NCBI GenBank assembly: GCA_002269645.1
Contig: NIVC01000010.1
Location: 1-64,000 of the forward strand
Source: Macrostomum lignano
Lineage: Eukaryota
Reading direction: 5' to 3'
DNA: 64,000 bases
In this document: positions 1 to 41,770 of the stretch, one piece after another
Position numbering within the stretch: the first letter of the stretch is position 1
Layout of the letters: every line of letters begins with the position of its first letter
Program-made: the position numbers and the translations under genes
Notes under the pieces: model-generated
Seen by the model: only the letters and a program-made list of their open reading frames with translations
Database searches by the model: none
Told to the model about the DNA's origin: nothing

Positions 1-8
1 ATAATATT

Positions 9-1022
9 TCAAAAATTAGTCGTTAAATTAGATAGAGCAAATGATGTTGCTTGAACTGGTGATCCCGACGTAGTTAATGTCGTCCATGAATCGGTAGCAA
101 CATTTTTTGCGCGAACCGACCACCCCGAGGGTATCTCAATTGTTTCACTGCCTGTAATTCTTAATTCAAATATTCTTCTATTATAACCTAAAAATTCAAA
201 TTGAATTTCCATATTGGTTGTGGTTCCGGTATTTGGTGACCATTGTGTCGCAAGGCTTCCATCTCCAACTCGAAAAGCTGTGTTGCCATTTTCAGATGCT
301 GTAAGAACAACATCAGGATTTGAAGTATTTGATGTAAGCGGCGTGGTAAAAATATCGGCGTCGGTTGCATTAGCTCGCTCGTTTACTTGGCCTAGAGTTA
401 TCGAGTCTGCGTTCTCTGTTCCAAATAATAAATTTGTTAATTTAAAATTATTCATATTAATATTTCCACTACGAGTGGCAACTTGATTATCGACATAGTT
501 CTTATCAACCACTGAATCACTAGTTGTAATTGAAACATTTATAATTCGGTTGTTGCTCATATCTAGGTTTCCGGTTGCGGTGGTTTGAACATAACGTGAA
601 TCAGAATCAGTTCGAGAATAAGAATCAGTTACATCTCTTTTTAAATTTAATCCATTATCAACTTCGGTTTTGGTATAAGAATCGGCTACGTTCCGTTTCA
701 AATTTAATGAATTATCAACCTCTGTTTTGGTATAAGAATCGGCTGTATTGCGTTTTAAATTTAATGAATTATCAACTTCGGTTTTGGTATAGGAATCGGC
801 TACGTTCCGTTTCAGATTTAGTGAATCATCTATTTGAGTTTTGGTATAGGAATCTGCAACATTTCTTTTTAAATTTAATTTATTATCAATTTCAGTTTTT
901 TTATAACCTTCATCCTCATTAATATATCGATTATCTCCAAATGTAACACTTATTCCACCAGATGTGCCACCACCACCACTACTTGTTGTTCCGTTCCATG
1001 AGGGTGTTCCAGAAAATAACAT
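9..1022 (-). CDS. Fibre/spike-like virion protein with 19-aa tandem repeats and a C-terminal beta-sandwich (discoidin-like) region
   Basis: About five repeats of LNLKRNVADSYTKTEVDNS, followed by GNLDMSNNRIINV and DKNYVD fibre-type motifs, then DGSLATQWS. Lies next to the protease and penton genes. May continue past base 9 through a frameshift in a T run. Confidence 0.65.
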   Translation of the reverse strand: MLFSGTPSWNGTTSSGGGGTSGGISVTFGDNRYINEDEGYKKTEIDNKLNLKRNVADSYTKTQIDDSLNLKRNVADSYTKTEVDNSLNLKRNTADSYTKTEVDNSLNLKRNVADSYTKTEVDNGLNLKRDVTDSYSRTDSDSRYVQTTATGNLDMSNNRIINVSITTSDSVVDKNYVDNQVATRSGNINMNNFKLTNLLFGTENADSITLGQVNERANATDADIFTTPLTSNTSNPDVVLTASENGNTAFRVGDGSLATQWSPNTGTTTNMEIQFEFLGYNRRIFELRITGSETIEIPSGWSVRAKNVATDSWTTLTTSGSPVQATSFALSNLTTNF

Positions 1023-1032
1023 TTTTTACTGT

Positions 1033-1500
1033 CTATTTTATAGAGTCTAAAATCGCCCCGTAGGGTCGCATGCTTTGCATGATAGTCTTAAATACTTCGG
1101 GGGTATCCTTCGAGTTATTAATTTTATATAAAAAATACAACGCCGCTTGCCCGCAATAACTTTTATCAAAGGTTTGAAATTGTTCGTGATGATCTCCACA
1201 TAAACGATTTTTAGTATGATTAAATTTATCTTTTATTTCCTGTAACGGAGGAAGCGCGTATGAATCAAAAAAATAAACAAGTTTTGGTTTTGAATAAACT
1301 GCTGACCAATGAACACCATTTTCTTTTGTTGTTTCAATATTAACAATGAAACATCCATATTGTGGTAAGTCTTTGATCTCATCTCGCATAACACATCTGA
1401 ATGGTTTTATTTTTAACTGCCTCGCCCAATTTGTTAATTCGATATTGCTTGTTGTGTCCGTTCCATATCTTTGTTTAAAATCATCCCACGTCATGGTCAT
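1033..1500 (-). CDS. Adenovirus-type (adenain) cysteine maturation protease
   Basis: Catalytic motifs GVHW, FFDSY and Q...YCG in the expected order. Confidence 0.9.
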   Translation of the reverse strand: MTMTWDDFKQRYGTDTTSNIELTNWARQLKIKPFRCVMRDEIKDLPQYGCFIVNIETTKENGVHWSAVYSKPKLVYFFDSYALPPLQEIKDKFNHTKNRLCGDHHEQFQTFDKSYCGQAALYFLYKINNSKDTPEVFKTIMQSMRPYGAILDSIK

Positions 1501-1501
1501 T

Positions 1502-1708
1502 TTATGTTCCTGAAAAACTCTTGGTTTTAGTTAGTTTCGTAGGTGTGGGTTTTAACAATTCCTTTCTTATTTTATCAGCTTGTAACTGCCTTAATTTTGC
1601 TAGTTCTAGTTCGTAATTATCTTCAGCTTTTTTAACTTTTTCTGATTGTTTTTTTATTAAATTATTATTATCGTGCTTTGCACGCGAACATGTTGTTCGA
1701 TTACCCAT
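1502..1708 (-). CDS. Small basic coiled-coil protein with an N-terminal MG (possible myristoylation)
   Basis: 68-aa ORF tightly packed between penton and protease; starts MGNRTTCS. Confidence 0.5.
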   Translation of the reverse strand: MGNRTTCSRAKHDNNNLIKKQSEKVKKAEDNYELELAKLRQLQADKIRKELLKPTPTKLTKTKSFSGT

Positions 1709-1718
1709 TTTTACAGTA

Positions 1719-2504
1719 CTAAACCTGTTTTATACGTAAAATTATTGTTATTGATTGCCCACCAAAACTTATTAATCTATCGCTTTCATCTACAATCCTA
1801 ATATAAATTGATTGAACGCTATATTGATTTAAAGGATAATATATTGGGGTTTGGGGTGCAACAATCATTTTCTCTCCAATTGGAACAGCAAGAAATGGGA
1901 TTGAATAAATAATTCCACGTTGAACCAAAACTCCGTTATCGTCTGTTATATAACCACCGTTTGAAATGTCGGTTGTTATATTAATTGTATTTACTCCACC
2001 CTCTATATTTCCAACTGTATCACCGGTGCTTGATGTGGTAACTATTCGGGAATTAAATCCAAGTATGGTTCTGAGTGAATTTGCAATTGTGAAATCAACC
2101 TGATATCCGGATCCTAGTGATAGTGTGAATCTGCCAGACGGTAAATCAACACCTATAACAATTGCTCCTGCTACCCAATCACCATTAGTTGTTAATTCTC
2201 CTTCTATATAAGCATTCAAATCAGTATAGCTATACGCTCCTGGGTTAACGCTAAATGTTGTCCAATTGGCTCCGGAATCTTTAGAATATCTAAATTGATT
2301 ATTTGTTGCATTAATTAATTGAGGCATGTTGAAAACCGAAAATAGTATTAAACCTATTTGATAACTTAGGCTTTGATCAAGTTGTAATGGATCGCGCAAT
2401 TGAATCCGTTGCTCGCTGGTTGTCATTATAAACTGTAATGTTGTACTAAATTTTGAATTAGTTCGATCTACCAATTGTTTTATAGTATTTAAATTTGTAG
2501 TCAT
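1719..2504 (-). CDS. Minor capsid protein (penton, single jelly roll)
   Basis: 261 aa, beta-rich. Polinton penton-like motifs: INATNNQFRY, SLRTILGF, INITTDI, PIYYPL, IRIVDESDRLISFGG. Confidence 0.8.
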   Translation of the reverse strand: MTTNLNTIKQLVDRTNSKFSTTLQFIMTTSEQRIQLRDPLQLDQSLSYQIGLILFSVFNMPQLINATNNQFRYSKDSGANWTTFSVNPGAYSYTDLNAYIEGELTTNGDWVAGAIVIGVDLPSGRFTLSLGSGYQVDFTIANSLRTILGFNSRIVTTSSTGDTVGNIEGGVNTINITTDISNGGYITDDNGVLVQRGIIYSIPFLAVPIGEKMIVAPQTPIYYPLNQYSVQSIYIRIVDESDRLISFGGQSITIILRIKQV

Positions 2505-2558
2505 TTTTATAGTGGGAAATTAATCGGACGAAGTCCGATCGTTCCGAAGGTACGCGTG

Positions 2559-3359
2559 CTATGCACGATCCTCTTCTTCCTCATTATCTTCTTTTATCAA
2601 ATTTGTTAAAATTCTATGTTTCCTTTCTAACCTCGGATTGATATAAATATGTTTGTATTGGCTATCATCCCAAATTTTTTTACACATACTTTTAAATGGT
2701 TTTGCATCCAATCCGGGATTAAATCTAGCGTGTATATTTTGTAAATCATAATTATCTAAATCAAACATTACACAACAACTTGCATTCTTTTTTATAATCG
2801 ATTCTAATTCTCTAAAGGATTGAGTAAGATAAAAAGCTCCAATTCCATCTCCTCTACCACTAACAAAAATTTCCTTTTGCAATTCTTGATCACCGTCATT
2901 AATACAATCATCAAAAATAATTAGTGTTTTATCATGTTTTGGAATTTGATCATAGGCTAATCGGGTTGATACTCTAACAGTTGGGGCTCGATCGGACGAA
3001 GTCCGCGACCCTTCGGGGCGATCGGTGATGTTTTCTGGCTGTTGTGCCATTGTTTTACATAAATCCTCAATGTCTGCTAGATTAAATCGCGGTTCGTCAT
3101 CATCCTCATATTGCTCATATGCTCTTAACATTCTAAACAAGACATCTTTTTTTAATTTGTTTTTTAATCCATGTTTAAGAAATTCATAATATTTTATTCT
3201 AGGTTTATTAGTATAAATTATTAAATTATTATAGTCTAACATTCCATCTGTTGTTAATAAATCGTAAACAAAGTGTGTTTTTCCTTTACCTGATCCTCCG
3301 ATTACTAAACAAAGAAAAGGATCATTTGGAAATATTTTATTGTGTTTTGCCTTTACCAT
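2559..3359 (-). CDS. A32/FtsK-like genome packaging ATPase
   Basis: Walker A GGSGKGKT, Walker B LIIFDD, followed by GR and LTQ motifs. Confidence 0.9.
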   Translation of the reverse strand: MVKAKHNKIFPNDPFLCLVIGGSGKGKTHFVYDLLTTDGMLDYNNLIIYTNKPRIKYYEFLKHGLKNKLKKDVLFRMLRAYEQYEDDDEPRFNLADIEDLCKTMAQQPENITDRPEGSRTSSDRAPTVRVSTRLAYDQIPKHDKTLIIFDDCINDGDQELQKEIFVSGRGDGIGAFYLTQSFRELESIIKKNASCCVMFDLDNYDLQNIHARFNPGLDAKPFKSMCKKIWDDSQYKHIYINPRLERKHRILTNLIKEDNEEEEDRA

Positions 3360-3443
3360 TTTTAAAGAAATAATTTAAATAGGCGCGACGGTCGGAGACC
3401 TGCACTCATTTTACAATGGTGCGACGTGCTTTGCACTGCGACA

Positions 3444-4912
3444 CTAAAGTGGCGCGTCCCGAACAATCGTGCCATCAGCTTTAGCAATTGACATATATTC
3501 CTCTAGAAACAATACGTGGGCGTCAAGTGCCTGATTACCGGTTTTATTAATCTCTAACATATAATTAAGTCCAATATTGGCTACGTTTTCTTTCTGTGCC
3601 GTTAGATCATAAACAACCACTGGATGAATGTTTAGAAACTCTGTGGGTGTGTACTGAGGGACGGCATACGCTTCATTTTTAGCATAATCTTGATAATATT
3701 TTATAAAATCATTAACATTATTATTTGCAATATTTAATTAGAGGATCTTTAACCGGATAATATTGATCATCAACCTGCAGGCGGATATTCTGAACATTAA
3801 ACTCGTTAATAGCTGCAGCCGCATTGTCTGTTGCGGTGGCTGCTTGTTCTGCTATGGCACCGGATTGAAGCCAATATAAATCCCCATTTGCTCTTTTACT
3901 CCTTCTATTTGTTATCTTAAACCAAACAAAAATATATCTCACCCGACGTTTTGATGTCAGTATTTGCCACTGGAATGAATCCTGGTTATTATTAATGGTT
4001 CGCATAAAATGTCGACGATTCAAATAAAATATTTCCTGATCATGCGTTAACTGATTATCGATGTGTTTTAAAAGTGGGGCTGTTACCTCAATAGTTGGTA
4101 CGACTAATTGAATTGAATCTATACGAACTGCTATATCGGTTGAAATTGAGGTTCCATAAAGTATCCTAGGCTGATATCCACCAGATATTTGCAACTGTAT
4201 CCCAAATTTTAATCCTTTCCATACCCGATTTGGTGAGAAAACCCAAATAGCGGAAGATTGAAAAGTCCTGCTCATATGCTGTTGCTGTGGTTAAAACCGC
4301 GACTGGGAATTTATTCTGACGATCTATAAAACCAGTATTAATATCTTTTGTATTAGTCATAGTGGTTACAACTGGAACTATGTTTGTATTAAGGTAAACA
4401 ATTAGCGCTGCAGTATCTGCACCGGCTGCGTTTTGTACATTAGGGAAAACTACTGCTTGACCGTTACCTTTATCCGGCATCCACCCAACATTATCACCAA
4501 CTTGTTTTGATAAATAAGTATAATTTAAATGTTTCAAAACTCCATTAATCTCTGCGGGGTTTGATGATGTCTCAACCTCAGCACCATTAACAGTTAGTTG
4601 AGCTTGGGAAAAACATTTATAAAACCAATCATTTTCTATTATTATTCCGGATCGATCTGCGATATCTCCGGCTGCAAGAGCAGTTCCATCATTTCTAGTA
4701 TACAACCATCTAACGCGGAAAAACGCATTTTTCATATCCAATATAGTGTTGGTTGCGCCGATGTCAAAAGTTACCGTTCCAGTAGTAAAGTTATTTGAAT
4801 TATCACTTGTTGGTAGGGTATAATTTAAATCTCTTGCTCTGACCTCATTAATATACTGTCGGTGCTTTTTGAAATGAAATTTATCACTCCACATAGTTTT
4901 TGTTTCAGCCAT
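3444..4912 (-). pseudogene. Major capsid protein (double jelly roll), broken by two frameshifts (near 4255 and 3735)
   Basis: ORFs 4166-4912 and 3721-4275, plus a third frame I translated by hand (NIANNNVNDFIKYYQDY...HPVVVYDLT...DAPL*, stop at 3444-3446), join to about 490 aa with Polinton MCP-like motifs. Confidence 0.8.
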
Positions 4913-4946
4913 TTTTTTAAGTTAAAAAAGTTTTTTATGTTAAAAA

Positions 4947-5611
4947 ATGAGTCAATTTATGGACGTTGATGGAGAGTTAGCGATTTATAAAGAGAAGCAA
5001 AGATATTCTGATTTTGTTAGAAATTTACAAAAAAGAAAGTTAGGAATACAATTAGCGGGTGAAAGATTTGCTGCTCCTTTTGTTAATCCTATTACTGGGA
5101 AAATTAGTGAACTAGAAAAAACAGATAAAGATCTTCTGGAAAAAATTGCTAAAAATACGGAGCCAAAAGAGGATGAAATTTTGGATGAGCCGCCTGCTTA
5201 TGATGTTGATCAAGCACAATTGAGAATTGCAGAGATTAGACGTGCAGAGCGGGGCGATCGGAACAATATCCAAGAGTACCAGCTAGTATTGCTGCGACAG
5301 ATTTAGGTAATAATAATTATCGAATTGGTGGAGTTGATAAAAATCGAAATGAACTATATAGAGAATTGGGTGGAGCATATAATATTGTTATGAACCCTAG
5401 GGTAAAGTTTAACCCTGATTTATATACTAGGGATGAATTAATAAGTGCTAGAATTTTTTATGATGAGTTAGGAGGAGCTGTTAAAAATACCAGCTTGTAT
5501 AAAAGGATTGTTAATTCTATAAATAACAAACCAGCTGTTGGTGATGGATTTAAAACTCCTAGAAAACTTGTTTTAGCTGCTGCGAAAGCTGCTGGACATA
5601 CTGGTGTTTAA
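4947..5611 (+). pseudogene. Polinton gene of unknown function, one ORF split by a 1-nt frameshift near 5270
   Basis: The frame of ORF 5366-5611 is open upstream (PRVPASIAATDLGNNNYRIGG...) and overlaps the end of ORF 4947-5306. Confidence 0.55.
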
Positions 5612-5638
5612 TTAATTGTTAAATTTATTTTTTATAAA

Positions 5639-6208
5639 ATGGAAACTAATAAGATTTGTACTAAGTGTAAACAAGAAAAACCGATGACGAAAGAATTTTA
5701 TTTTTGGAGAAATGATTCAAAAAAATTTAGAAATGATTGTCGATCTTGTCATAATACCTCATCTGCTATTTGGATAAAAAACAATAAAGATAAATGGAAT
5801 GAATATAGAAAAAATAAGTATCACACTGATGATAATTACAAACATATTGTTTTAATTAGAAATAGAATAAATTGGGCGTTGAAAAATTTTAATGACAAGG
5901 ACTATATCTCATATCTTGGTTGCACAAAAGAATTCTTTTTTGATTGGTTAAATTTCACAAGAAATTATTATGTATCAAAAGATTATACTGGAAAGTTAGA
6001 TATTGATCATTTCATCCCCGCTTCTTCATTTAGTTACAAAGACGATGATCAGATTAAAAAGTCTGAAAATTGGAGAAATAAAAGATACTTAACTAGCGTA
6101 GATAATAACTATAAAAAAGTTAAACAACCAACAATTGAAGAATTTGCGAAACAATTGGTGCTTTCATGTATTTTTAAGGCTATTAAAAATGAACCAAATA
6201 GTGTTTGA
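5639..6208 (+). CDS. Free-standing HNH/EndoVII-like endonuclease with an N-terminal zinc ribbon
   Basis: CTKC...CRSC zinc ribbon, YLGC, LDIDHFIPASSF...WRN...DNNYKK. This resembles the architecture of homing-type nucleases in large DNA viruses. Confidence 0.75.
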   Translation: METNKICTKCKQEKPMTKEFYFWRNDSKKFRNDCRSCHNTSSAIWIKNNKDKWNEYRKNKYHTDDNYKHIVLIRNRINWALKNFNDKDYISYLGCTKEFFFDWLNFTRNYYVSKDYTGKLDIDHFIPASSFSYKDDDQIKKSENWRNKRYLTSVDNNYKKVKQPTIEEFAKQLVLSCIFKAIKNEPNSV

Positions 6209-6891
6209 AGGAGGATTTTTAGACTTACAAAAAGGATTAACGAGCTTACCACCAATCTTTACTACTGGTAAATATACAGGGGAACTACACCTACCATCAA
6301 TGAACTTCACAGGTTAACCCGTGGCCTGAGTGGTAGAAGCAAAGCTACTGCTAGTCACTATTAGTGGCGATGTCTCCAAATTGCGTGAAACCCGTCATAC
6401 AGCTTCAAGTACCACTTCAATTGAGAAATCTTTTGAAGGAACAGAGGTAACTCCTCTTCCCAAAGGTAAAAAGCTTGAAGACATGGTGGCAATGCGCAGC
6501 CAAGCTCCTAAGTATTTTAAATATAAGGAGAAGGTTCAGAGAGCAGACGGAGATGGGCGGTAATTATCGCCGCTTAAGGTGTGCTCCAGCCTCATTCGAA
6601 AGATTGAGGGTAAACAGCCGGGACTAGACTGGATTTAAGATTAAATCCTGACAATACTCCAAAATCTGATTCAATTCCAATAAATGGGATTGATTGGTTA
6701 GCATACTATCACGACTTAGCATATAGAGATGCTGACAAGAACCCGCCGAGGAAGCATTAAGATTAAAACATGAAGCCGATCAAAAAATGATTCAAGGATT
6801 AGATAACTTGCAGGGATTATCGGTAGGTCAAAAATTAACTAGGTGGATGGTTAAAAAGATCTTGCAGTCTAAAGTTAAATTTGGTTTGGGA
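6189..6891 (+). CDS. Parvovirus-type phospholipase A2 (PLA2X); exon 1 is 6189-6314, exon 2 starts at 6618
   Basis: Exon 1 ends GELHLPSMNFTG. After the intron the frame reads (P)GTRLDLRLNPD...PINGIDWLAYYHDLAY...KHEADQKM...KSKVKFGLG, giving the Ca-loop GPG and the catalytic HD and AD motifs. Needs a 1-nt correction near 6618 and another near 6743. Confidence 0.85.
6315..6617 (+). ncRNA. Group I self-splicing intron, subgroup IC1, with no internal ORF
   Basis: P AAATTGCGTGAAA (6378-6390), Q AATGCGCAGC (6491-6500), R GTTCAGAGAGCA (6534-6545), S AAGGTGTGCTC (6576-6586). P4 is TGCGT/GCGCA, P7 is GAGCA/TGCTC, P3 is GTCTCC/GGAGAT. P5abc has an A-rich bulge and GAAA loop, with a CCTAAG/TAAGG receptor in P6. 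P1 is CAGGT/GCCTG with a U-G pair at the splice site. Terminal G at 6617. Confidence 0.92.
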
Positions 6892-7764
6892 ATTAATTAT
6901 AATCAACATGGAAATAATTGTGTTGAGTGTTTACTATTAAGTGGCAGTGGGTTAAGTTCTGATGAGGCAAAGATTCTTCATAAAGAATATCGAAAACCTA
7001 AATTTTATAGAAAAATCATGAACTTCAAAAAGAATGAAATTTGGTATGCTGATTTAATGTCGATGCCGAAAGATCTGGGATATAAATATATCTTAACCAT
7101 ATTAGATGGTTTTACTCGATACGCGTGGGCTGTTCCTTTAAAATCCAAAAAGGGAGAGGAGGTTGCTGCTGCTTTTAGAAGTCTTGGAGAAAAAAGCGAA
7201 AGATTGTGTGTTGATGAAGGAAAAGAATTTTACAATCCTCATATGTATAAATTGTATCATTTTGAAAAAGGAAAAGAAAGGAAAAAAGACGCGAATGGGG
7301 AGTATATTAATAAAATTTATTCTATTTATGGAGAGAGTAAAAACGCATTAATAGAAAGATTTAATCGAACTTTAGGTAAGAAATTATGGTTTCAGTTTAG
7401 TCTTAATGGTAACCAAAAGTGGGTAAAAATATTACCAGACGTAGTGAAAGATTATAACAATTCATATCATTCAGCTATAAAGATGACTCCTCAACAAGCT
7501 TATAACAATCCTGAAAAAGTTAAAGTTACTTTTGGAAAATTTGAAAAAAATAAAAAGAAATCTTTTAAGGTTGGTGATTCTGTTTATATCTATAAATGGA
7601 AAGATAAGTTTGAAAAAGGAAGAAAAGGATATTGGAAGATAAGTGAGAAATTTACTATCAGTAAAGTTTTAAATACCAATCCTACAACCTATATAATTGC
7701 TGATAAGGACGGTGAAGAAATATTGGGTTCTTTTTATGAGAACCAGATAATGTCTGCGAACTAA
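6787..7764 (+). CDS. Retroviral-type (DDE) Polinton integrase, in frame with the PLA2 C-terminus
   Basis: WYADL, LCVDEGKEFYN and IERFNRTL give the D-D-E triad. Also YNNSYHSAIKMTP and an SH3-like FKVGDSV region. The first ~35 codons are the PLA2 tail. Confidence 0.92.
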   Translation: MIQGLDNLQGLSVGQKLTRWMVKKILQSKVKFGLGINYNQHGNNCVECLLLSGSGLSSDEAKILHKEYRKPKFYRKIMNFKKNEIWYADLMSMPKDLGYKYILTILDGFTRYAWAVPLKSKKGEEVAAAFRSLGEKSERLCVDEGKEFYNPHMYKLYHFEKGKERKKDANGEYINKIYSIYGESKNALIERFNRTLGKKLWFQFSLNGNQKWVKILPDVVKDYNNSYHSAIKMTPQQAYNNPEKVKVTFGKFEKNKKKSFKVGDSVYIYKWKDKFEKGRKGYWKISEKFTISKVLNTNPTTYIIADKDGEEILGSFYENQIMSAN

Positions 7765-7774
7765 GTTCAAACAG

Positions 7775-7999
7775 TTACTTAAGACAACATGGTAGTAAAT
7801 TTTTTATTACAAACAAAAACAATATTATTACTATAATTGTTACTAATATTATTATTGACATTTGTTCAACTGTTATCAAACTTAAATTTTCATTAAGTTC
7901 ATTAATTGGAACATTTCCGATGTAGGAATAGTTTACCTTCATTTTTTTATATATATTTTTCACAATAAATGTCGTTTCTGTTATAGAATAATAGTTCAT
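7775..7999 (-). CDS. Small putative membrane protein (C-terminal TM helix, di-Cys)
   Basis: Hydrophobic run SIIILVTIIVIILFLFVI followed by KNLLPCCLK. Confidence 0.4.
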   Translation of the reverse strand: MNYYSITETTFIVKNIYKKMKVNYSYIGNVPINELNENLSLITVEQMSIIILVTIIVIILFLFVIKNLLPCCLK

Positions 8000-8015
8000 T
8001 TTTTAAATATTTTTT

Positions 8016-8330
8016 TCACATAAAAATTTCACTTTCATTCTCTGAATCACTGGTTTCATATGAACTATTTGTTGATTCGGAATCTGTTGATCTAACCTCC
8101 CAATCATCCGAATTTAAATAATCTCCAAGTTGAAATATTAACTCACCCTCTTGTTCTAAATCATACATCTCATCTAGCTCTAATGGATAAAGTTTTAGGT
8201 CGTGCTTGTCGTCATATTTTAAATAAACTTCATCAATTATTCCATTCAAAATATGTTGTTTTATTATCTCTGCATTTTTAGCAACAGTCTCAAAAGTATC
8301 ACTAACAGAAAAGGTGTAAACTCGGGTCAT
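8016..8330 (-). CDS. Acidic hypothetical protein, last gene before the terminus
   Basis: 104-aa ORF with viral-like composition and an AT-rich upstream context like the other genes of the element. Confidence 0.5.
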   Translation of the reverse strand: MTRVYTFSVSDTFETVAKNAEIIKQHILNGIIDEVYLKYDDKHDLKLYPLELDEMYDLEQEGELIFQLGDYLNSDDWEVRSTDSESTNSSYETSDSENESEIFM

Positions 8331-8384
8331 TTTTAGTAACAGAAAAAGACCCTTCGCGCCTGCGGCGCGGGCAAGGGGTTATAG

Positions 8385-8655
8385 AGTAGTAGTATAGAAA
8401 AAGACGCTTCTAGATCAGACCTTATTTTAATGGCCGTTTGTAAGGTCTTAAGAGGGGGGACGCGAGGGGGGTGTTAGGGAGTGTTTGGAAGTGTTGGGAA
8501 GTGATTTTTATTGTTAGGGGTGATTATGGGTGATTAGATGTGTTAAGGGTGTTTAGATGTGTTTTTTTATTTACCCCCCGTGTCCCCCCTCTAGACCCTT
8601 AAAACGGTCATTAAAAAAGTGCTCTGGGTCTAGAAGCGTCTTTTTATATACTACT
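8385..8655. repeat. Polinton right terminus with an internal inverted copy of the end sequence
   Basis: AGTAGTATAGAAAAAGACGCTTCTAGA at 8388 matches the reverse complement of the end (AGTAGTATATAAAAAGACGCTTCTAGA) at 26/27. Similarity continues for about 85 bp. Confidence 0.85.
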
Positions 8656-10537
<1,882 letters not shown>

Positions 10538-16917: not shown

Positions 16918-19900
16918 TTAGAGCTCCATCTCCATGCCGATGTCAGGCAAGTCCAGGTCGCCTTCAGCGAGCACCTCCGGGTGGCGCGAGCTGGGCTCGA
17001 ACAGCTGACTGCATCGCAGGTCAGGCTGAACTGTGGCTGGCTGCTCTGGCGCAGGCTGATCGGCTGGGTCGACTTCGCTGTCTTTGCTCGACTCATAGGG
17101 CAGCATTGGCCACTCTGTCTGGCGCTGCGGCTCCTGTGGTCGATCTGCCATCATCTGCGGCACCTTGATGATGTTGTTACGATGAACTAGCATTTCAGCT
17201 GGGCGTCCTCGGCGGGCTGTCACTGGCTTGATCCAATACGCCACTTCTCCGACTTTCCTGATGACCTTGTACATACTCTTGTATGGCCGGTGGAACTTGG
17301 GCAGCTCTCCCAGTTCGAGCTTCGGGTTGGCCAGGCAGACCAAGTCTCCGGGCTGCAGCTCCACAGGCTTCGGCTGGTTCTCGTAGTACTCCTCTCGGCG
17401 CTGGATCTCGGTCCTCAGCCGCTGTCGCACAATTCGTTCTGTCTCGGCCAGTCTGCGCTGATGTTTGGCAATGTACTCCGGGAGATCAGCTGATACATCC
17501 AGTCGGTCTAGGGTGTTATCAATCGGATACCGGTAGGGCACTCCGTAGATGACATAATGCGGCGAGAACCCGGTTGTATGATTGACTGCTGATCTTAAAG
17601 CTGTTAAAGCGGCTGGCAACATCTTGTCCCATTGCTGATGGTCTTCTAGGAGACAGGTGAGCACCTTCTTGATGTTCTTATTGCACGACTCAGCTTGTCC
17701 ATTGGCCCATGGTGAATACGGCGGCGTCGTGGTCTGCCGGATGCCGTAAACTTTGCAGAAGTGCCGGAACTCGTGTCCTGTGAACTGTTTCCCTTGATCG
17801 GAGTGAATCCATGCCAGGATTCCGGTGATCAGAAACACTTGTTCCTGCAGGAGCGTTATAATGGTCTTGGCCTGCTGATTCTTCATGGCGAAGGCGAAGG
17901 GGTATTTCGACGTGGTGTCAACATAGGTCAGGATGTACTTGTTGCCTCAGTCTGTCGGGTCTCCAGTGGGGCCCAGGATATCGATCACACATCGCCCATA
18001 GATTTCACAGACCAGAAACGATTGTACATGCGCCGGAATTTGTCGCCGTCCTTTGCTCTGAGTGCAGGTCTGGCAGGAAGCGACATAGTCGGACACTGCC
18101 TTGGCCAGGGCAGGTCGCCAGAACCTTTCACGCACCTTCGTGATGGTGAGGTCTCGGTCCATGTGTCCGCAGTAGGGTGAACCGTGGAGGTCGGCGAACA
18201 CCGTGGCGTTGAGGCTCTTTGGCAGGACGATCTGTGCCATTTCCTCCTTGCCAATATTGTCGAAATGAATTACCAGTAGTCCATCGTCTCGGACTTCGAG
18301 CTGCTCATAGAATGCTAGTAGGTTTCGTTCGTCTCGCGTCATATTCAAACGCTGATTCAGCGGCGGCTTCGGCTGTCGGCTTTCCAAAAGATTGATCATC
18401 ATGGCGATGGCAGAGTCAGCACGCTGATGAGTCTGGAGCTCCTCACGAGTGACTGGCCTCGGGATGTGATCAGTTAGATTCAATGATGGGCGTCAGTTAG
18501 TTAAATTAGTCAGCGCGGCTTCGGCTGTGGCGGCATGGTTCGGGGTCTGGAGCTCCCTCCGCATGATTGCTACTCTGGCCGGTTGCCGGGTTGTTGATGT
18601 GCCCGAAGGTCGATCCTCGTCGGTAGCTTTGGCGTCACTGTTGTCGGATTCAGATCGGTCAGCAGTTGATGATGAGTCAGCAGAGCTGTCCGCGTCACTG
18701 CTGAATCTCACCTTCTTCTCAAACTTTGGGCAGCAAGCGAGTTGGCAGCTGTCCTCTCTGGCTGCGCTGTGGTTGCTGTCCATGCCATCTCCAGCTAGTA
18801 GTCGGCGGCTCCTTGACAGGCAACATGTCGTGCTACTAAAACTGGTAGGCGACCTCTGCAAGTCATCGTAACGGCTGGCTGATGGCCTCGGCTTCGTCGC
18901 CGGCAGGTGCAGCTCTGTCAGCGGCTTGCTGTCGGCTTTCGGTGTTGCTGGCGGCATAGCCTCGCTGTTGGACTCCTTCGGCTTAGTCGGCGGTTTCCGT
19001 TGCTTACGGCGGGTCGACAGCTTCTTGCTCGGTGGAGGACTAGGGTGGCTGCTGTCGTGGACCTTCGGTGCCGCTGCGCCAGTTATCGCGGCTGGCTGCT
19101 TACTTTGGTCCCCTTCAGCTGCCTCTCGCTGAGCCTCCTCCAAGCATTCGGCGTCATCCTCCGGCCGTCTCGAGAGACCGTCGGCATTTTGATGCTGACT
19201 CAATTTGCAATGCTGGATCTCGAACTCAAATTCACTTAGCCGCTGTAGCCATCATCCGAAGATGCCTACTTGTTGAGTTCGCCGGAGAATCCAGGTCAAC
19301 GCTGCATGGTCGGTTCGACAAATGAACTTCTTGGCCAGCAGGTAGAAACGGAAATGTCGCATGCCATCTACGACTGCCAAGAGTTCTTGCTTAGTAATTG
19401 GATATCGGGCTTCAGCCGGTTTAAGTCGCCGGGAGAAATAGCCAATTGGGCGCTCGATCCCGTCAGCTTGGCGTTGGCTCAGGCAGGCTCCGATTCTGGT
19501 CGCAGAAGCATCCGTGTCCAGGATAAACATTACTTCCGGATCCTCGCTGAACTGCGGATACGCGAGCACTGATGTCGAAGTCATGGCTGCTTTGAGCTGG
19601 TCGAACGCGTCTTGCTGGGCTTTTCCCCATAGACAATTGAAATTGCGGATTTTCTTCTCTTTGATTATATCGTGGAGCGGAGCTGCAAGTTCTGCATAGC
19701 CAGGTACAAATTTTGCATAGTAAGCGCACGTGCAGACGAAACTTTTAAGTTGTCGAGCTGTTCTTGGTCTTGGCCAGGTCTGAATAGCCTCAATCTTCGC
19801 CGGATCGGTCTTGATGCCGTCCTTAGTAACTACATGTCCCAGATAGTTTAGGCTTGCCCGAAATAAATGGCACTTCCTGCTTTTGAACTTTAAGTTGGCC

Positions 19901-22770
19901 TCTTGAATTCGCTTAAATACTTCCTCCATATGCTGTAGATGGTCATTAAATTTCCTAAAATAGACGATTAAGCTGGCTGGCGCCGAACTTAATCCCATGG
20001 GCATCACATTGTAGGCAAATTGTCCGCAGTGCAGCGTGGCAAAGGCCGTCAGATCTTGATCCTCTGGACGCAGTGGAATCTGGTAGTAGCCGCTGTTCAA
20101 GTCGAACGTGATGAATAGCTGGCTTCCTTCGAGGCTAGCGAACGCTTCCTAGATGTTCGGTATTGGGTACGGAAAGTATTCGCACTTTTGGTTCAGACTC
20201 CTGAAGTCTTGTACAATTCTCAGGCTGCCATCCTTCTTTGGGATGATCACCAGCAGGGTGTTGTAGCTGGAGAAGCTCGGTCGAATCACGCCTTTGGCAA
20301 GCAGATCGTCAAGCAGCTGGTCCACCTTGGGCATCAGATGCGGCGGAATCCTTCGGGTCGGCAGATGTACAGGATCCTTGTCCTTCAACACGATGTTGTG
20401 GGTGACCAGGTGAGTTCGGCCGAGATCGTGTGGCCTCTGCGAGAAGATGGTCTTGTACCTCTTCAATAGCTCGATGACTTGAGCGCGCTGGTCATTAGAC
20501 AAGTCCTCGCCGATGTCGATCTCTTTGATCCAAGCGTCAGGATCTTCGTCTTGAACTTGATTAACTGAAGCTTCTGGCTTCGGCAGCAGAAAGAATTGTA
20601 ACTCGGGCAGTCTGATTGGTCTAGCAATCCCAACTAGGGCATTCGCTTGCACTTTGATGGAAGTAGTGCCTCGATTGATCATCTCAATGGCGCCTTCTCC
20701 ATTGGCCATAGATATTAGGGCAGGCGCGGCGTCCAGTTGCTGCATATCTTCTTCCCGCCGAGCCGGTTTTAGCGGCTCGATCACAGTAGGTGTGCCCTAG
20801 TTTTCTTCTCGTCCTTTTGCTAGTTTAATCTTGATTCGGGCTGATGATAATGGCGGCACGGTTGTGCTCTCAGCCGTGTAGATTCTGCACGTAGTAGCTT
20901 CAGTTCGCGTATAGCGCAGTGGTGCGGCAGTGCCATCCTTGAAAAACAGCATCCCGGCGGCGAGATCCAGTGATGTACTGTACTTCTCCAGGAACTCGAA
21001 GCCCACGATGTTGTCATGAGATCCCTTCGCTAGCAGGAACTTGACTGTAGGCTCGAAACTTCCAATTTTAACTTTGATTGATAGTTGGCCTGCCATTTGA
21101 ATAGGCTCTCCATTGTAGATCACGATGCGTTGCAGGCAGGGCTCGATTTGGCCACGCAGGGTCGGGTCATCGGTACATAGTTGGTGCCAGGTGCTGAATC
21201 CTAGGACTTCGCACTTGGAGCTGGTGTCAAGCAGAAAAGCAAAATAATGGCCCTGAATCTCACCAGTTAGAACAATCCCTTCGGGGTCGCTTGGGTGCAG
21301 AGTTATGTATAGGTGCAGCGGAGGCAGTCTCAGCAGTGGCCTGCTGAGCGACTAAAGTCCTCGGCGGGGACCTTAGTGCTGGCTCAGCTGCTGGATGGCG
21401 CTGCCCCCATTGGCGCGTACAGCCGTCCCGTTTTCCGAGCTGCCGTTGCGCTGGGGCGCGGTGCTGGCCGACCGCCAGTGCAGGCACTCATCGGCGTGGT
21501 GCTCGCGATTGCACCTGTAACACATAGCACTCTGTTGCCGCAGCTGATAGGGCGGCGGGCGTGAACCCGACTGTTGCTGCTGCTGCGGCTGCTGCTGCTG
21601 CTGCTGTCGACGTTGACCTCCTGCTCGCGGTGTCCTTGGTGGCGGGTTGCTGCCATCTCGTGGTTGCTGAAGTCGATGGAACTGCTCGTGCTGCACAATC
21701 CGTGTGCCGGGTGTCTTGAATTGGGCGCTCTCATTGGCGCTGCGGCGAGGAGTCGAGGGCACCAAACATCTGTTGCGTTGGCCCCAAGAGTCCTGCGGCT
21801 GGTGGCGAGCAGATTCCCAATGCTCCTGGGTGTCGTTATTGCGCGATCCCAGCAAGTGGAACTCTCGCAGCTCATTGCTCAAAGCTTCTAGTAGACGTTG
21901 CTGCTCTTGCAGTGTCTCAGTTTGCTGTTCCATCACTTCACGCAACCAATTCTCCTCGGGCCAAGATGACTTGTCGTGTTGCACTCCAGTTGCTGACTGA
22001 CTGTCGTCATCTTCGAGGACCTGGACATGTCTCGCTGCTGGCGGCAGTGCTATCCTCTGAGCCAGACTAGCTGCTATCTCCAGGCATAGCACAGCCCTTC
22101 TCGCTGCGGTCAGATTCTGCGGTCGCACCAGGATTAGCTGTTCTCTGGCTGACTGGGCAATTCGCACTCCCATGGTGAACTGGTCCACTAGCTCGGCCTG
22201 CTTCTGAACCGGGGTGAAGTGCGGGAATGCTCTATTGGCCAGAGCGATTAATCAATCGCCGTAGTCATCCACACTCTCATTCTTGCCTTGCTGGCAGCAC
22301 CGGAATTGCTCACGGTACTCCAGCGTGTCGTGCGTGAAGCGCTCGGACAATCTCTGCTTGAATTTGCCAAACGTCAGATTGTCCGGCAGTTCCATCCTGA
22401 GGACTGCGGGATAGGTTCTGGCGATGTCCAAATTCACTAGGACTTCCGCCTTCTTACGTCTGTCGTCCATGATCCCGTTGAGTTCGCAACGCTCCTCGAG
22501 AGCCTGGATCCAGATGTCAAAGTCCTGGTTCGGGGTGTACCGCTGAATCTTGACCGGTTTTGGCGCCGGAGCTCGGTCAGGCTGTTATGGCGGCTGATAC
22601 ATGTGGTGATAGTGCTGCGGCTGTCCCAAGTTGGCTTGCTCCAGTCGCCATCTCACCTCTTCGGTCACTGCTCAAATCATCTTGTTGTAGGTCGGCCTAG
22701 TAGTTGAGTTGTCAAGGCCTGCGGCGTCGGCTGTTGAATCCATGGCCGTTGAGTTAGTTGTCGAAGCCAT
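16918..22770 (-). pseudogene. Gypsy gag-pol with stops and frameshifts
   Basis: Gag zinc knuckle CYRCNREHHADEC; protease LLDTSS; RT (VIIPKKDGSLRIVQDFRSLN, YNVMPMGL); RNase H (LDTDAS, TDHAAL); integrase (H-H-C-C, HSDQG, GQAE, YRYP). Confidence 0.92.
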
Positions 22771-26334: not shown

Positions 26335-26405
26335 CTCTTAAAAAAACTGAATCTCTTAAACCATGTCAGACTGCTTGTTCATGCCATTTTATACGATTGT
26401 TATTG

Positions 26406-28660: not shown

Positions 28661-29079
28661 GAAAGTATTACGAAGGTGCCCTACTATACGAGGATATTTA
28701 AAGTGCATTGCTGCAGGCACAATGTACGTACATGTACATGTAGTTCGAGTGAACCTTGTGACAAGCATGCAGCAATTAGATAAAAAACTTCAGCTGCCTC
28801 AAAGTTTCGAGAAAATACCTGCTTTTAAGTGGAACAGACAATGCGCGCCCATAAATAAAACAAATGCGCCGTTTAAATTGCTTGCTTTTCCTCCAAGCTG
28901 CACGTTTGCTCCTCCTGAGACATGTCAGATGGAGGAATTTACATGTACAGGAAATTAAGAACGGCCAATGAAGTCTCTACGAGAGTTTGAGTTAAAATAT
29001 TGCTACACCTTGTAATTATACTTTTTTCTAACCCAAGCCTTTTTGAAAGCCTCTGATCTTCCTTTAGATGCTTGTTAGC

Positions 29080-41545: not shown

Positions 41546-41770
41546 ATGTGTCGCAGCAACAGGGGCGATCTCGGCGTAATTAATCAACATGCAATTATAA
41601 TTATTGTCTCTGGCCAAAATTAAGGCTGCATATTTCAAAGTACATATTTATTTGATGACTATGCGAATTAGGTGGGCTAAATTTATAGAGGGGGTTAACT
41701 TGTAGCCAAGGCGATTATAAACTTAGCAGTAGCAATACAAAGGATCGCATCGTCGAAAGTGTAAAACAAA

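What the first reader, a model, noticed from the sequence alone, without database searches (positions are those of the whole stretch)
6315..6617. Group IC1 self-splicing intron inside the PLA2 gene of a nuclear Polinton
Seen in sequence: the PLA2 frame stops at ...ELHLPSMNFTG-TAA and resumes 303 nt later at (P)GTRLDLRL...DWLAYYHDLAY. The intervening DNA folds like the Tetrahymena LSU intron. P1 is exon CAGGU paired with IGS GCCUG, with the U-G pair at the splice site; P2 and P2.1 follow. P3 is GUCUCC/GGAGAU and P4 is UGCGU/GCGCA. P5abc has the A-rich bulge and a GAAA loop, and P6 has a CCUAAG/UAAGG receptor. P7 is GAGCA/UGCUC with the bulged-A guanosine site; P8, a GAAA-capped P9 and a terminal G at 6617 complete it. 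P7 differs from the usual GACUA/UAGUC on both strands, a compensatory change that argues for a maintained ribozyme. Established: IC1 introns typify nuclear rDNA of protists, algae and fungi. In animals, group I introns are classically mitochondrial (cnidarians, sponges, placozoans), and introns favour conserved active-site codons, as here in the Ca-binding GPG loop. Inference: a virus-like element has brought a catalytic intron into a protein-coding gene in an apparently animal nucleus. Caveat: exact splicing gives GGT|CC GGG, one base short. Either a base is missing from the C/G run, or the 5' site is one U later (a second U-G pair exists), giving GSGT in frame. I cannot check whether this has been reported before.
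Basis: partly seen in the sequence, partly recalled or inferred. Interest (0 to 1): 0.95.

Follow-up and report, generated by a model that had tools for sequence, protein, structure and literature searches.

The report
Self-splicing intron in a virus-like element
A 303-base group I (self-splicing) intron really does interrupt the phospholipase-integrase gene of a virus-like element at the very end of a flatworm genome scaffold, but it belongs to an intron family already common in giant viruses and their small satellite viruses, and it is not proven that the element sits in the animal's chromosomes.

Summary
Window 6315-6617 (+) is a group I intron. Rfam RF00028 scores 61.3 bits against a cut-off of 50. 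The window forms all 52 base pairs conserved across 29 relatives, and 31 of those pairs show compensatory changes. The intron splits the Gly-Pro-Gly calcium loop of a parvovirus-type PLA2 domain fused to an rve integrase.

Homologous introns occupy the same codon boundary in two metagenomic relatives, where the exons join in frame. Closely related intron-less alleles also exist.

The core belongs to a large intron family: 87 IMG/VR contigs, many of them giant-virus MAGs, and more than 120 metagenome contigs. In those contigs it interrupts Rpb1, Rpb2 and VLTF3 genes.

The window copy has no internal endonuclease gene. A free-standing HNH gene lies about 106 nt upstream and is related to intron-borne HNH genes of the same family.

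The window is the first 64 kb of a Macrostomum lignano scaffold. The element occupies bases 1 to about 8386 and is cut by the scaffold end. As assembled it carries five frame changes and no in-frame stop. Integration in an animal nucleus is therefore plausible but unproven.

Group I introns in Polinton-like viruses of protists were reported in 2025. This is a new member of a known kind.

The parts
1..8386 (.). Partial Polinton-like virus (PLV) element. AT-rich (28-37% GC) and cut by the start of the scaffold. The right-hand limit is approximate.
   Evidence: Composition. Gene content. Colinear with the morphogenesis module of L215. Window coordinates equal record coordinates of NIVC01000010.1.
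9..1022 (-). Fibre-like protein gene (337 aa) with 19-aa (57-nt) repeats at 618-906. Intact ORF.
   Evidence: PHROG tail-fibre families. Tandem repeat.
1033..1500 (-). 155-aa ORF, homologous to the 139-aa gene of L215 (50% identity). Intact.
   Evidence: tblastn.
1719..2504 (-). 261-aa ORF, homologous to the 263-aa gene of L215 (26% identity). Intact.
   Evidence: tblastn.
2559..3359 (-). A32-type packaging ATPase (266 aa). Intact.
   Evidence: Pfam PF04665, 29.1 bits against a cut-off of 22.8. 27% identity to the L215 ATPase.
3444..4912 (-). Probable double-jelly-roll major capsid protein gene. Broken: 2 frame changes and no in-frame stop.
   Evidence: N- and C-terminal parts match the L001 capsid gene in different frames. 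The N-terminal part is 31% identical to the PF21738 capsid protein of L215. A direct homologue search found nothing.
4947..5611 (+). Gene homologous to the 183-aa gene that precedes the PLA2-integrase gene in L003. Broken: 1 frame change.
   Evidence: tblastn gives two pieces in two frames.
5639..6208 (+). Free-standing HNH / endonuclease VII-like gene (189 aa). It ends about 106 nt upstream of the intron insertion site and overlaps the PLA2 start codon. Candidate homing endonuclease.
   Evidence: PHROG 1035 at 8.6e-8, PHROG 2255 at 3.7e-5. Homologues lie inside introns of the same family in giant-virus contigs, and free-standing in L003. The motif IDH..P...N...N is conserved. Pfam support is weak.
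6189..7764 (+). PLA2 (PF08398-type) - rve integrase fusion gene, interrupted by the intron. Broken as assembled: 2 frame changes and no in-frame stop.
   Evidence: 438 homologues, many with both PF08398 and PF00665. The window fragments tile P0002 at 73-82% identity. Pfam hits on the homologues are above their cut-offs.
6189..6314 (+). Exon 1. It ends with the first Gly codon of the Ca-binding GxG loop.
6315..6617 (+). Group I intron, 303 nt, without an internal ORF. P1 to P9, ending in G6617.
   Evidence: Rfam 61.3 bits. Covariation. All 52 family pairs are formed. Boundaries by homology with L001 and L002.
6310..6328 (+). P1: exon CAGGU plus UA paired with the guide sequence 6322-6328. The splice-site wobble is U6314-G6324.
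   Evidence: Rfam alignment. MFE fold. An exon/guide compensatory change is seen between window/L001 (C-G) and L002 (U-A).
6329..6368 (+). P2 and P2.1 hairpins. In L001 the P2.1 stem encloses the endonuclease ORF; here it is closed by a short loop.
   Evidence: MFE fold. Comparison with L001.
6382..6535 (+). P4-P6 domain. P4 6382-87/6493-98. P5 6392-94/6487-89. P5a 6403-13/6465-80 with A-rich bulge 6469-73. P5b with a GAAA loop. P5c 6443-46/6454-57. P6/P6a 6499-6515/6521-6535 with CCUAAG/UAAGG.
6539..6587 (+). P7 (6539, 6541-45 / 6582-87, bulged A6540, invariant G6541-C6586), enclosing the P3 3' strand (6549-55) and P8 (6556-59 / 6571-74).
6590..6617 (+). P9 hairpin with a GAAA loop, a short tail and the terminal G.
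6618..7764 (+). Exon 2: the rest of the PLA2 domain (HD..Y catalytic motif) and the integrase.
7775..8330 (-). Two small ORFs (74 and 104 aa) of unknown function. These are the last genes before the junction.
   Evidence: No family hit.
8387..8656 (.). 270-nt foldback (28-nt arms, 96% complementary, plus an inner 19-nt pair) between the element and the host-type sequence.
8660..9557 (+). 5'-truncated LINE-like reverse-transcriptase fragment. GC-rich host-type DNA begins here.
   Evidence: ORF translations. Composition. No Pfam hit at E <= 0.001, so the assignment is by eye.

Best explanation
Window 6315-6617 is a structurally intact group I intron of IC1 type, without an internal ORF. It sits in phase 0 between the Gly and Pro codons of the Ca-binding GPG loop of a PLA2-integrase fusion gene of a Polinton-like virus (PLV).

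Inferred mode of action, from the established group I pathway. The transcript folds into P1-P9. Free guanosine bound at the P7 site (G6541-C6586, next to bulged A6540) attacks after U6314, which is held in the U-G wobble of P1. The terminal G6617 then takes its place and the exons are ligated, so the intron costs the gene nothing and needs no spliceosome.

Family. The intron belongs to a large mobile family shared by giant viruses and PLVs.

How it reached this site (inferred). It arrived by endonuclease-driven homing. Relatives at the same site still carry a PD-(D/E)xK-like endonuclease ORF in P2.1. The window copy has lost it or never had it. A free-standing HNH gene about 106 nt upstream may serve in trans.

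State of this copy. It lies in an element fragment at the end of a Macrostomum lignano scaffold. Three of the element's genes are not in one frame as assembled. That reflects either assembly indels or early decay.

Shown: identity, structure, site, family and polymorphism. Inferred: catalysis, homing, the role of the HNH gene, and residence in the animal genome.
For: - Covariance model: RF00028 at 61.3 bits against a cut-off of 50, full model length. The homologue in L001 scores 65.3 bits. The intron-less L003 and L213 give no hit.
- Structure prediction: RNAalifold on 29 diverse cores recovers P3, P4, P5, P5a, P5c, P6, P6a and P8, with 28 of 47 pairs compensatory.
- Pair counts: with P7 added, 97.8% of cells pair against 34-47% when partners are slid. 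31 of 52 pairs change on both sides, and 0 of 500 shuffles reach the observed values.
- The window copy: it forms all 52 pairs. It departs from the family at only 5 of 88 conserved columns, and all five keep pairing.
- Same insertion site: relatives L001 and L002 carry the intron at the same site with in-frame exons.
- P1 covaries between exon and guide sequence.
- Intron-plus and intron-minus alleles: L002 and L215 have 100% identical exon-2 protein. Their DNA differences cluster next to the insertion site.
- Family spread: 87 IMG/VR and more than 120 metagenome contigs, in Rpb1, Rpb2 and VLTF3 genes.
- HNH relatives lie inside family introns.
- The host gene is a PLA2-integrase fusion.
Against: - The exons of this copy do not join in frame, and the gene has a second frame change. 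No working protein can come from the sequence as assembled.
- There are no expression or splicing data.
- P10 pairing with the 3' exon is weak by inspection.
- The receptor 3' strand is UAAGG rather than the commoner UAUGG. This variant occurs in 4 of 29 family members.
- The endonuclease assignments are weak: RE_Eco47II at E about 5e-4, below its cut-off; HNH only through PHROGs plus 1 of 9 Pfam hits.
- Some IC1 introns do not self-splice without host factors (PMC8395846).
- Rfam misses the intron in larger searches.
Confidence: 0.8

Rival explanations
1. The strong reading of the first stage. The element is a germline-integrated Polinton of the flatworm, and the intron is removed from nuclear transcripts. 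It would then be a working catalytic intron in a nuclear protein-coding gene of an animal.
For: - The element is contiguous with flatworm DNA in a 2.39-Mb scaffold, alongside an iGluR gene, an LTR element, a LINE-like fragment (assigned by eye) and satellites.
- A related element (L215) lies next to LINE and DDE transposase genes of a eukaryotic genome. The only named relatives of that LINE are animal.
- PLVs with a parvovirus-type PLA2 are known from insects (PMC11296320).
- The ribozyme core is intact.
Against: - The element occupies only the first 8.4 kb of the scaffold and is cut by its end, so there is one junction and no TIR or TSD.
- It has five frame changes in three genes.
- No near-identical copy is on record anywhere.
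- The intron family and the HNH relatives come from giant-virus contigs. That points to expression in a virus factory rather than from a nuclear gene.
- There is no transcript evidence.
Confidence: 0.2
2. The element is not in the flatworm genome. It is DNA of a PLV from a protist or a free virus in the non-axenic worm culture, joined to the scaffold end by a chimeric read or an assembly error.
For: - It lies at the extreme end of the scaffold and is truncated.
- GC is 28-37%, against 42-60% in the flank.
- The closest proteins (59-71% identity) are all from environmental assemblies.
- Damage in the element consists only of frame changes (5, with no stops). The neighbouring host retrotransposon has 7 in-frame stops and no frame change over 5.3 kb, and the 3-kb iGluR ORF is intact. 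This is what lower read support over the element would give.
Against: - About five indels in 8.4 kb still implies a multi-read consensus.
- Chimeric joins are rare in long-read assemblies.
- Relatives do integrate in eukaryotic genomes.
- A foldback and a 5'-truncated LINE at the junction look like ordinary host repeat context.
Confidence: 0.35
3. The intron is a dead relic. It has a recognisable fold but no longer splices, and it sits in a pseudogenised endogenous viral element.
For: - The exons are out of register and the host gene has a second frame change.
- There is no internal endonuclease ORF.
- The receptor is a variant, and P10 is weak by inspection.
Against: - All 52 conserved pairs are kept. 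Every departure from the family consensus is compensated. All 65 columns that are invariant across the 29-sequence alignment, window included, carry the same base in the window.
- Damage elsewhere in the element is of a kind that assembly errors also produce.
Confidence: 0.15
4. It is not an intron at all: a chance resemblance, a spliceosomal intron, or an unrelated insertion.
For: Whole-window Rfam searches are silent.
Against: - 61.3 bits over the full model length.
- Strong covariation.
- Homologous, precisely bounded insertions in relatives, and precise absence in others.
Confidence: 0.01

Closest known systems
Group I introns of giant viruses (Bodo saltans virus polr2a/polr2b, klosneuviruses, the Cymbomonas endogenous giant virus Rpb1; PMC5871332, PMC10675990)
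   Same: The same intron family by sequence. The motif GGTAAAAA-N15-30-GCAGCCAAGNTCCTAAG, spanning the A-rich bulge, P4/P6 and the receptor, is found in 87 IMG/VR contigs, many of them labelled GVMAG. There it interrupts Rpb1, Rpb2 and VLTF3 genes at conserved sites. HNH endonucleases related to the window's ORF lie inside those introns.
   Different: The host gene here is a PLV PLA2-integrase. This copy has no internal ORF. None of the roughly 200 pattern-derived loci has a PLA2-integrase next to the intron.
RF00028 hits in Polinton-like viruses of protists (Rhodomonas lacustris, Paulinella micropora, Desmodesmus armatus; PMC12220804)
   Same: Group I introns of similar size (309-376 bp there, 303 bp here) inside PLV genes near the capsid gene. 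Free-standing and fused HNH and GIY-YIG genes occur in the same elements.
   Different: Those were reported in a gene for a short (about 50 aa), unannotated protein upstream of the capsid gene, in protist genomes. I could not test whether that short protein is in fact a PLA2 first exon. Here the host gene is identified and the contig is from an animal.
Tetrahymena LSU rRNA intron (group IC1 archetype)
   Same: From established knowledge, not from a sequence comparison made here: P2/P2.1, P5abc with an A-rich bulge in P5a, an L5b GAAA loop docking on a CCUAAG/UAUGG-type receptor in P6, a bulged A next to the G-binding pair in P7, and a U-G wobble at the 5' splice site.
   Different: The host is a protein-coding gene of a virus-like element rather than nuclear rDNA. 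P9 is short, without large P9.1/P9.2 extensions. No subgroup model was available, so 'IC1' rests on anatomy.
Phage ORF-less introns served by a neighbouring free-standing endonuclease ('collaborative homing', Bonocora and Shub 2009; 'intronless homing', Belle et al. 2002; cited in PMC11296320 and PMC5871332)
   Same: The arrangement: an intron without an ORF, with an HNH gene immediately next to the intron-bearing gene.
   Different: There is no evidence here on the endonuclease's target. A homologue in L003 is free-standing next to an intron-less gene.
Group I introns of animals (mitochondria of cnidarians, sponges and placozoans; mostly subtype IB4, PMC11835236)
   Same: Group I introns associated with an animal genome project.
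   Different: A different compartment, subgroup and host genes. Nuclear group I introns are otherwise confined to the rDNA of microbial eukaryotes (PMC8395846, PMC9223047).

Membership tests
Group I intron (Rfam RF00028) | Covariance-model score at or above the curated gathering score. | tested here: met
   61.3 bits against 50, model positions 1-253 of 253. The intron is missed when 9 kb or more is searched, because of filters.
Group I intron (Rfam RF00028) | Conserved core P3-P8, including the P3/P7 pseudoknot, supported by covariation. | tested here: met
   52 pairs in 11 helices, 97.8% paired, 31 pairs with two-sided changes. The window forms all 52.
Group I intron (Rfam RF00028) | P1 with a U-G wobble at the 5' splice site, formed with an internal guide sequence. 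| tested here: met
   U6314-G6324 in P1. An exon/guide compensatory change is seen against L002.
Group I intron (Rfam RF00028) | Guanosine-binding pair in P7 next to a bulged nucleotide, and a terminal G before the 3' splice site. | tested here: met
   G6541-C6586 is invariant in 29 of 29. A6540 is bulged. G6617 aligns with the terminal G of L001, whose exons join in frame.
Group I intron (Rfam RF00028) | Excision leaves a continuous reading frame in the host gene. | tested here: not met
   In this copy the exons are out of register by one base. The feature is met in L001 and L002. This bears on the state of the copy, not on the identity of the intron.
Group I intron (Rfam RF00028) | Guanosine-dependent self-splicing. 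| not testable with these tools
   No transcript or biochemical data are held.
Subgroup IC1 | P2 and P2.1 are present. | tested here: met
   Two hairpins at 6329-6368 in the MFE fold. The P2.1 stem of L001 encloses its ORF. This rests on a single-sequence fold and is weaker than the core evidence.
Subgroup IC1 | P5abc extension with an A-rich bulge, and a GNRA L5b loop with an 11-nt-type receptor in P6. | tested here: met
   P5a and P5c covary. GGUAAAAA is invariant, as are the GAAA loop and CCUAAG. The 3' strand of the receptor is UAAGG in the window and UAUGG in most members.
Subgroup IC1 | Assignment by subgroup-specific models (GISSD or ERPIN). | not testable with these tools
   Rfam holds a single group I model.
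Polinton / Maverick in the strict sense | Protein-primed family B DNA polymerase. | not testable with these tools
   Not present in 1-8386. The element is cut by the scaffold start.
Polinton / Maverick in the strict sense | Retrovirus-like (rve) integrase. | tested here: inconclusive
   PF00665 scores 29.5-29.6 bits in the window protein, below its cut-off of 32.6. Homologues P0013 and P0005 score above the cut-off at 40.5 and 39.6 bits; P0002 scores 31.6, just below it. The family assignment through 438 homologues is clear.
Polinton / Maverick in the strict sense | Double-jelly-roll capsid proteins, an A32/FtsK-type ATPase and an adenain-like protease. | tested here: inconclusive
   The ATPase is met. 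The capsid gene has only weak links to a PF21738 protein and no direct homologues were found. No protease is present in the fragment.
Polinton / Maverick in the strict sense | Terminal inverted repeats and a target-site duplication. | not testable with these tools
   Only one end of the element is in the assembly.
Mobile (homing) group I intron | Endonuclease gene inside the intron. | tested here: not met
   The intron has no sense-strand ORF running in from a start after the splice site; the only sense-strand ORF inside it (77 aa, GTG start, 6330-6563) runs across the conserved core helices, so I do not count it as a gene. L001 and L002 carry a 158-199 aa ORF in P2.1, with a weak RE_Eco47II match.
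Mobile (homing) group I intron | Presence/absence polymorphism at one site among close relatives, with flanking co-conversion. | tested here: met
   In relatives, not in the window. L002 against L215 shows 100% identical exon-2 protein. 5 of the 10 DNA differences lie in the first 100 nt after the site, and exon 1 diverges towards it.
Endogenous element of the Macrostomum lignano nuclear genome | Both junctions with host DNA, read support across them, and presence in independent assemblies. | not testable with these tools
   One junction only, at a scaffold end. No reads or other assemblies are held.

The most novel reading that the evidence does not exclude
A Polinton-like virus carrying a structurally intact group I ribozyme is genuinely integrated in the germline of a bilaterian animal. 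Virus-like elements would then be a route by which group I introns enter animal nuclear DNA, and enter protein-coding genes, from which they are otherwise unknown. The intron would have been exchanged with giant viruses, which implies that this flatworm or its ancestors hosted a giant virus and PLV pair.
Probability: 0.4. Interest if true: 0.7.

Novelty: new member of a known kind. Interest (0 to 1): 0.5.

Why it matters
- Mobile-element traffic. One group I intron family, with its HNH endonucleases, is shared between giant viruses and Polinton-like viruses. This traces traffic of mobile elements between a virus and its satellites.
- A new host gene and site. The host gene is a PLA2-integrase fusion and the site is the calcium-binding loop. 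As in RNA polymerase genes, this is an active-site codon boundary.
- An annotation blind spot. Standard Rfam annotation at genome scale misses this intron, although it scores above the curated cut-off. Such introns are probably under-counted in eukaryotic and viral assemblies.
- If integration is confirmed. This would be the first group I intron seen in nuclear, non-rDNA sequence of an animal.
- What it is not. It is not, as it stands, evidence of a working catalytic intron in an animal gene.

Tried and rejected
- Rfam. The whole-window search at gathering threshold, and the 9-kb search at E-value threshold, gave no hit. Only the 651-nt search shows the intron.
- Exact-protein look-ups of three element ORFs found nothing on record. 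Other copies or other data sets could therefore not be traced.
- A protein-guided scan of IMG/VR gave only one distant locus, L005.
- Pfam on the window's own PLA2 fragments gave nothing. The domain assignment rests on homologues.
- A homologue search with the capsid N-terminal ORF found nothing.
- The host of the L215 element could not be identified through its LINE. Only distant animal LINEs carry names.
- A literature search for the sample and assembly accessions of the relatives gave no paper.
- For the HNH ORF, the PDB sequence search, the profile search and NCBIfam found nothing useful. The single-sequence AlphaFold model had pLDDT 41.6 and was not used.
- A 5' splice site one U downstream was considered and set aside, because the family splices after GGU.
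- An intron as the cause of the split capsid gene was considered and rejected. The pieces overlap and no RNA family hit was found.
- I did not build a family-specific covariance model.
Full report
**1. The observation**

The stretch 6315-6617 interrupts an open frame. The frame starts at ATG 6189 and reads ...GELHLPSMNFTG, followed by TAA. Coding sequence resumes after 6617 as ...GTRLDLRLNPDNTPKSDSIPINGIDWLAYYHDLAY.

Searched in a 651-nt stretch, Rfam's group I model RF00028 matches 6305-6608 over its full length. The score is 61.3 bits against a gathering score of 50, with E 4.4e-15. The same model reports nothing when 9 kb or the whole window is searched. The speed filters lose the match, probably because of the roughly 95-nt P5abc insertion relative to the model. 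A routine genome-scale annotation would therefore miss this intron.

**2. The host gene**

The ORF downstream of the intron has 438 homologues. Many of them combine Pfam PF08398 (parvovirus-type phospholipase A2) with PF00665 (rve integrase).

In the three full-length homologues tested (P0002, P0005 and P0013), the PLA2 domain scores above its cut-off: 33, 40.5 and 46.9 bits against 23.9. The three window fragments, taken as they stand, tile the closest intron-less homologue P0002 at 75%, 82% and 73% identity.

P0002 reads ...YNFTGPGTRLELRL...DWLAYHHDLAY. The window's own fragments are too short to hit Pfam.

**3. Homologous introns at the same site**

Two metagenomic relatives carry an insertion at exactly the same codon boundary:
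- L001 (ERZ28573525), intron 694-1528. It scores 65.3 bits with RF00028.
- L002 (ERZ25070786), intron 9179-10030.

In both, exon 1 ends ...GGT and exon 2 starts with a Pro codon, so the exons join in frame. Alignment with L001 fixes the window's boundaries at 6315 and 6617.

L003, L213, L214 and L215 have the uninterrupted gene. L003 and L213 were also searched with Rfam and gave no hit.

The family does not favour it: L001 has the same UU, L002 has a single U, and both use the site after GGU.

**4. Structure and covariation**

A motif spanning the A-rich bulge, P4/P6 and the receptor (GGTAAAAA-N15-30-GCAGCCAAGNTCCTAAG) retrieved 87 IMG/VR contigs and more than 120 metagenome contigs.

I aligned 29 diverse cores, the window included, with MAFFT.
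- RNAalifold, without guidance, predicted P3, P4, P5, P5a, P5c, P6, P6a and P8. 28 of its 47 pairs are compensatory.
- With P7 added as a pseudoknot, 97.8% of 1504 cells form standard pairs. When partners are slid by 1-3 columns the figure is 34-47%.
- 31 of 52 pairs change on both sides. No shuffle out of 500 reaches the observed values.
- P7 alone shows G-C/A-U alternation at its first pair (15 against 14) and four other pair types.

The window sequence forms all 52 pairs. It differs from the other 28 at only 5 of 88 columns that are at least 90% conserved. Four of those five are two compensated pairs: U-G for G-C in P4, and C-G for U-A in P7. The fifth turns A-U into G-U in P3.

L001 shares the variant.

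P1 also covaries. The exon C paired with a guide G in the window and L001 becomes U paired with A in L002.

The single-sequence fold recovers P1, P2, P2.1, P4-P6, P8 and P9, with z = -2.5.

The anatomy is that of subgroup IC1 as described in the literature (PMC8395846, plus established knowledge of the Tetrahymena intron): P2/P2.1, P5abc with an A-rich bulge, a GAAA loop, a CCUAAG receptor, and a bulged A in P7. No subgroup model was available to test this formally.

**5. Mobility**

L001 and L002 carry an ORF of about 160-200 aa in the P2.1 loop. The two ORFs are 52-56% identical to each other and weakly match the PD-(D/E)xK restriction enzyme family RE_Eco47II (E about 5e-4, below its cut-off). 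In the window, P2.1 is closed by a short loop and the intron holds no comparable endonuclease ORF (the one long internal ORF is discounted in the membership test).

L215 comes from the same sample as L002 and is an intron-less allele. Its exon-2 protein is 100% identical over 386 residues. Of the 10 DNA differences in 1270 nt of exon 2, five lie in the first 100 nt after the insertion site. Exon 1 diverges towards the site. This is the pattern left by recent gain or loss with co-conversion.

Immediately upstream of exon 1 the window has a 189-aa ORF (5639-6208). It matches PHROG endonuclease VII and HNH families at 8.6e-8 and 3.7e-5. The intron-less relative L003 has no gene at that position, but it does have a 44%-identical copy downstream of its integrase.

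Homologues of this ORF at 25-35% identity lie inside introns of the same family in giant-virus contigs L061, L204, L029, L083 and L159. They share an IDH..P...N...N motif. Pfam support is thin: 1 of 9 members, E 0.006. The structure model was useless.

A free-standing endonuclease beside an ORF-less intron is the arrangement known from phages as collaborative homing. Its role here is inference.

**6. Where the family lives**

Downstream exons of family members in IMG/VR and metagenome contigs are RNA polymerase Rpb1 (at the catalytic ...DGDEMN... site), Rpb2, and poxvirus-type VLTF3. By eye, some are ubiquitin.

Self-splicing introns with HNH or GIY-YIG genes in polr2a and polr2b of Bodo saltans virus and klosneuviruses are published (PMC5871332). 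So is one in Rpb1 of an endogenous giant virus of Cymbomonas (PMC10675990).

None of the roughly 200 pattern-derived loci has a PLA2-integrase next to the intron. The PLV site is therefore a minor branch of a giant-virus intron family.

RF00028 hits in PLVs of Rhodomonas, Paulinella and Desmodesmus were reported in 2025 (PMC12220804).

**7. The element and the organism**

The 1009-aa glutamate-receptor ORF at 31273-34302 is found, exactly, only in NIVC01000010.1 of GCA_002269645.1, at identical coordinates. That assembly is Macrostomum lignano Mlig_3_7. The window is therefore the first 64 kb of a 2.39-Mb flatworm scaffold.

Bases 1 to about 8386 are AT-rich and encode the following:
- a fibre-like protein
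- two conserved PLV proteins
- an A32-type ATPase
- a probable capsid protein
- the HNH gene
- the PLA2-integrase
- two small ORFs

These genes are colinear with the morphogenesis module of L215. No polymerase, protease or terminal repeat pair is present, because the scaffold starts inside the element.

A 270-nt foldback (8387-8656) follows the element. After it come what reads by eye as a 5'-truncated LINE fragment (it has no Pfam hit), an LTR retrotransposon, satellites and the receptor gene.

**8. State of the copy**

Three element genes are not in one frame as assembled:
- PLA2-integrase: 2 frame changes
- capsid: 2 frame changes
- the gene at 4947-5611: 1 frame change

None of them has an in-frame stop, and seven other ORFs are intact.

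By contrast, the neighbouring host retrotransposon reads in one frame for 1757 codons with 7 stops and no frame change. The 3-kb receptor ORF is intact.

Ordinary decay gives stops as well as indels. Indels alone suggest consensus errors from thin read support over the element, or very recent damage. Thin support would fit either a scaffold-end or minority insertion, or a contaminant joined by a chimeric read.

Relatives do integrate in eukaryotic genomes. L215 lies next to LINE and DDE transposase genes, and the only named relatives of that LINE are animal. PLVs with a parvovirus-type PLA2 are known from insects (PMC11296320).

I put genuine integration at somewhat better than even.

**9. Verdict**

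The claim of a catalytic intron working in an animal nucleus is not established, and the kind of thing is already known.

Nuclear group I introns are otherwise confined to the rDNA of microbial eukaryotes (PMC8395846, PMC9223047). Animal ones are confined to mitochondria (PMC11835236). Confirmed integration would therefore be a notable first. Read-level, distribution and RNA-seq evidence would settle it.

Noticed in passing
window 5639-6208 (+): A free-standing HNH / endonuclease VII-like ORF lies directly upstream of the intron-bearing gene. It is related at 25-35% identity to HNH ORFs inside introns of the same family in giant-virus contigs. A 44%-identical free-standing copy sits downstream of the integrase in L003.
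   Followed up: yes
window 6305-6608: Rfam RF00028 scores 61.3 bits (cut-off 50) in a 651-nt search. The hit is lost by the filters when 9 kb or 64 kb is searched, so genome-scale Rfam annotation would miss this intron.
   Followed up: yes
window 8387-8656: A 270-nt foldback (28-nt arms at 96% complementarity, plus an inner 19-nt G-rich/C-rich pair) lies exactly between the element and the host-type LINE fragment. There is no other copy in the window. It could be a MITE-like insertion or a terminal structure.
   Followed up: partly
window 16918-22188 (-): The pol region of a host LTR retrotransposon (RT, RNase H, integrase) reads in a single frame for 1757 codons, with 7 in-frame stops and no frame change. 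This is the opposite damage pattern to the PLV-like element.
   Followed up: partly
window 31273-34302 (-): A single-exon 1009-aa ionotropic glutamate receptor ORF (ANF_receptor, Lig_chan-Glu_bd, Lig_chan). It is intact and was used to identify the scaffold.
   Followed up: partly
window 26391-27785, 29079-30202, 35600-36212, 37037-37666, 39313-39690, 40352-41540: Six satellite arrays with periods of 54, 24/47, 20, 20, 16-40 and 7-22 nt. They account for the strong local GC skews and for the long spurious ORFs at 36951-37721 and 40146-41579.
   Followed up: no
L002 9179-10030 and L215 10001-11341 (both from ERZ25070786): Intron-plus and intron-minus alleles of the same gene in one sample, with 100% identical exon-2 protein. 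The DNA differences are concentrated next to the insertion site. The L215 element is flanked by LINE and DDE_3 genes. The protein clusters hold 34 members (integrase) and 41 (LINE), which suggests many genomic copies.
   Followed up: partly
window 618-906, within ORF 9-1022 (-): 57-nt (19-aa) tandem repeats, 5 copies, inside the fibre-like protein gene.
   Followed up: no
L011, L070, L211 (3' flanks of family introns): The downstream exons read ...PPDQQRLIFAGKQLEDG..., so members of the same intron family also interrupt ubiquitin genes in giant-virus contigs. This was seen by eye and not run through Pfam.
   Followed up: no
L005 1442-1756 (-) and 4001-4624 (+): In this IMG/VR contig the PLA2-like and integrase parts match on opposite strands, as separate genes. 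The fusion is therefore not universal in the lineage.
   Followed up: no
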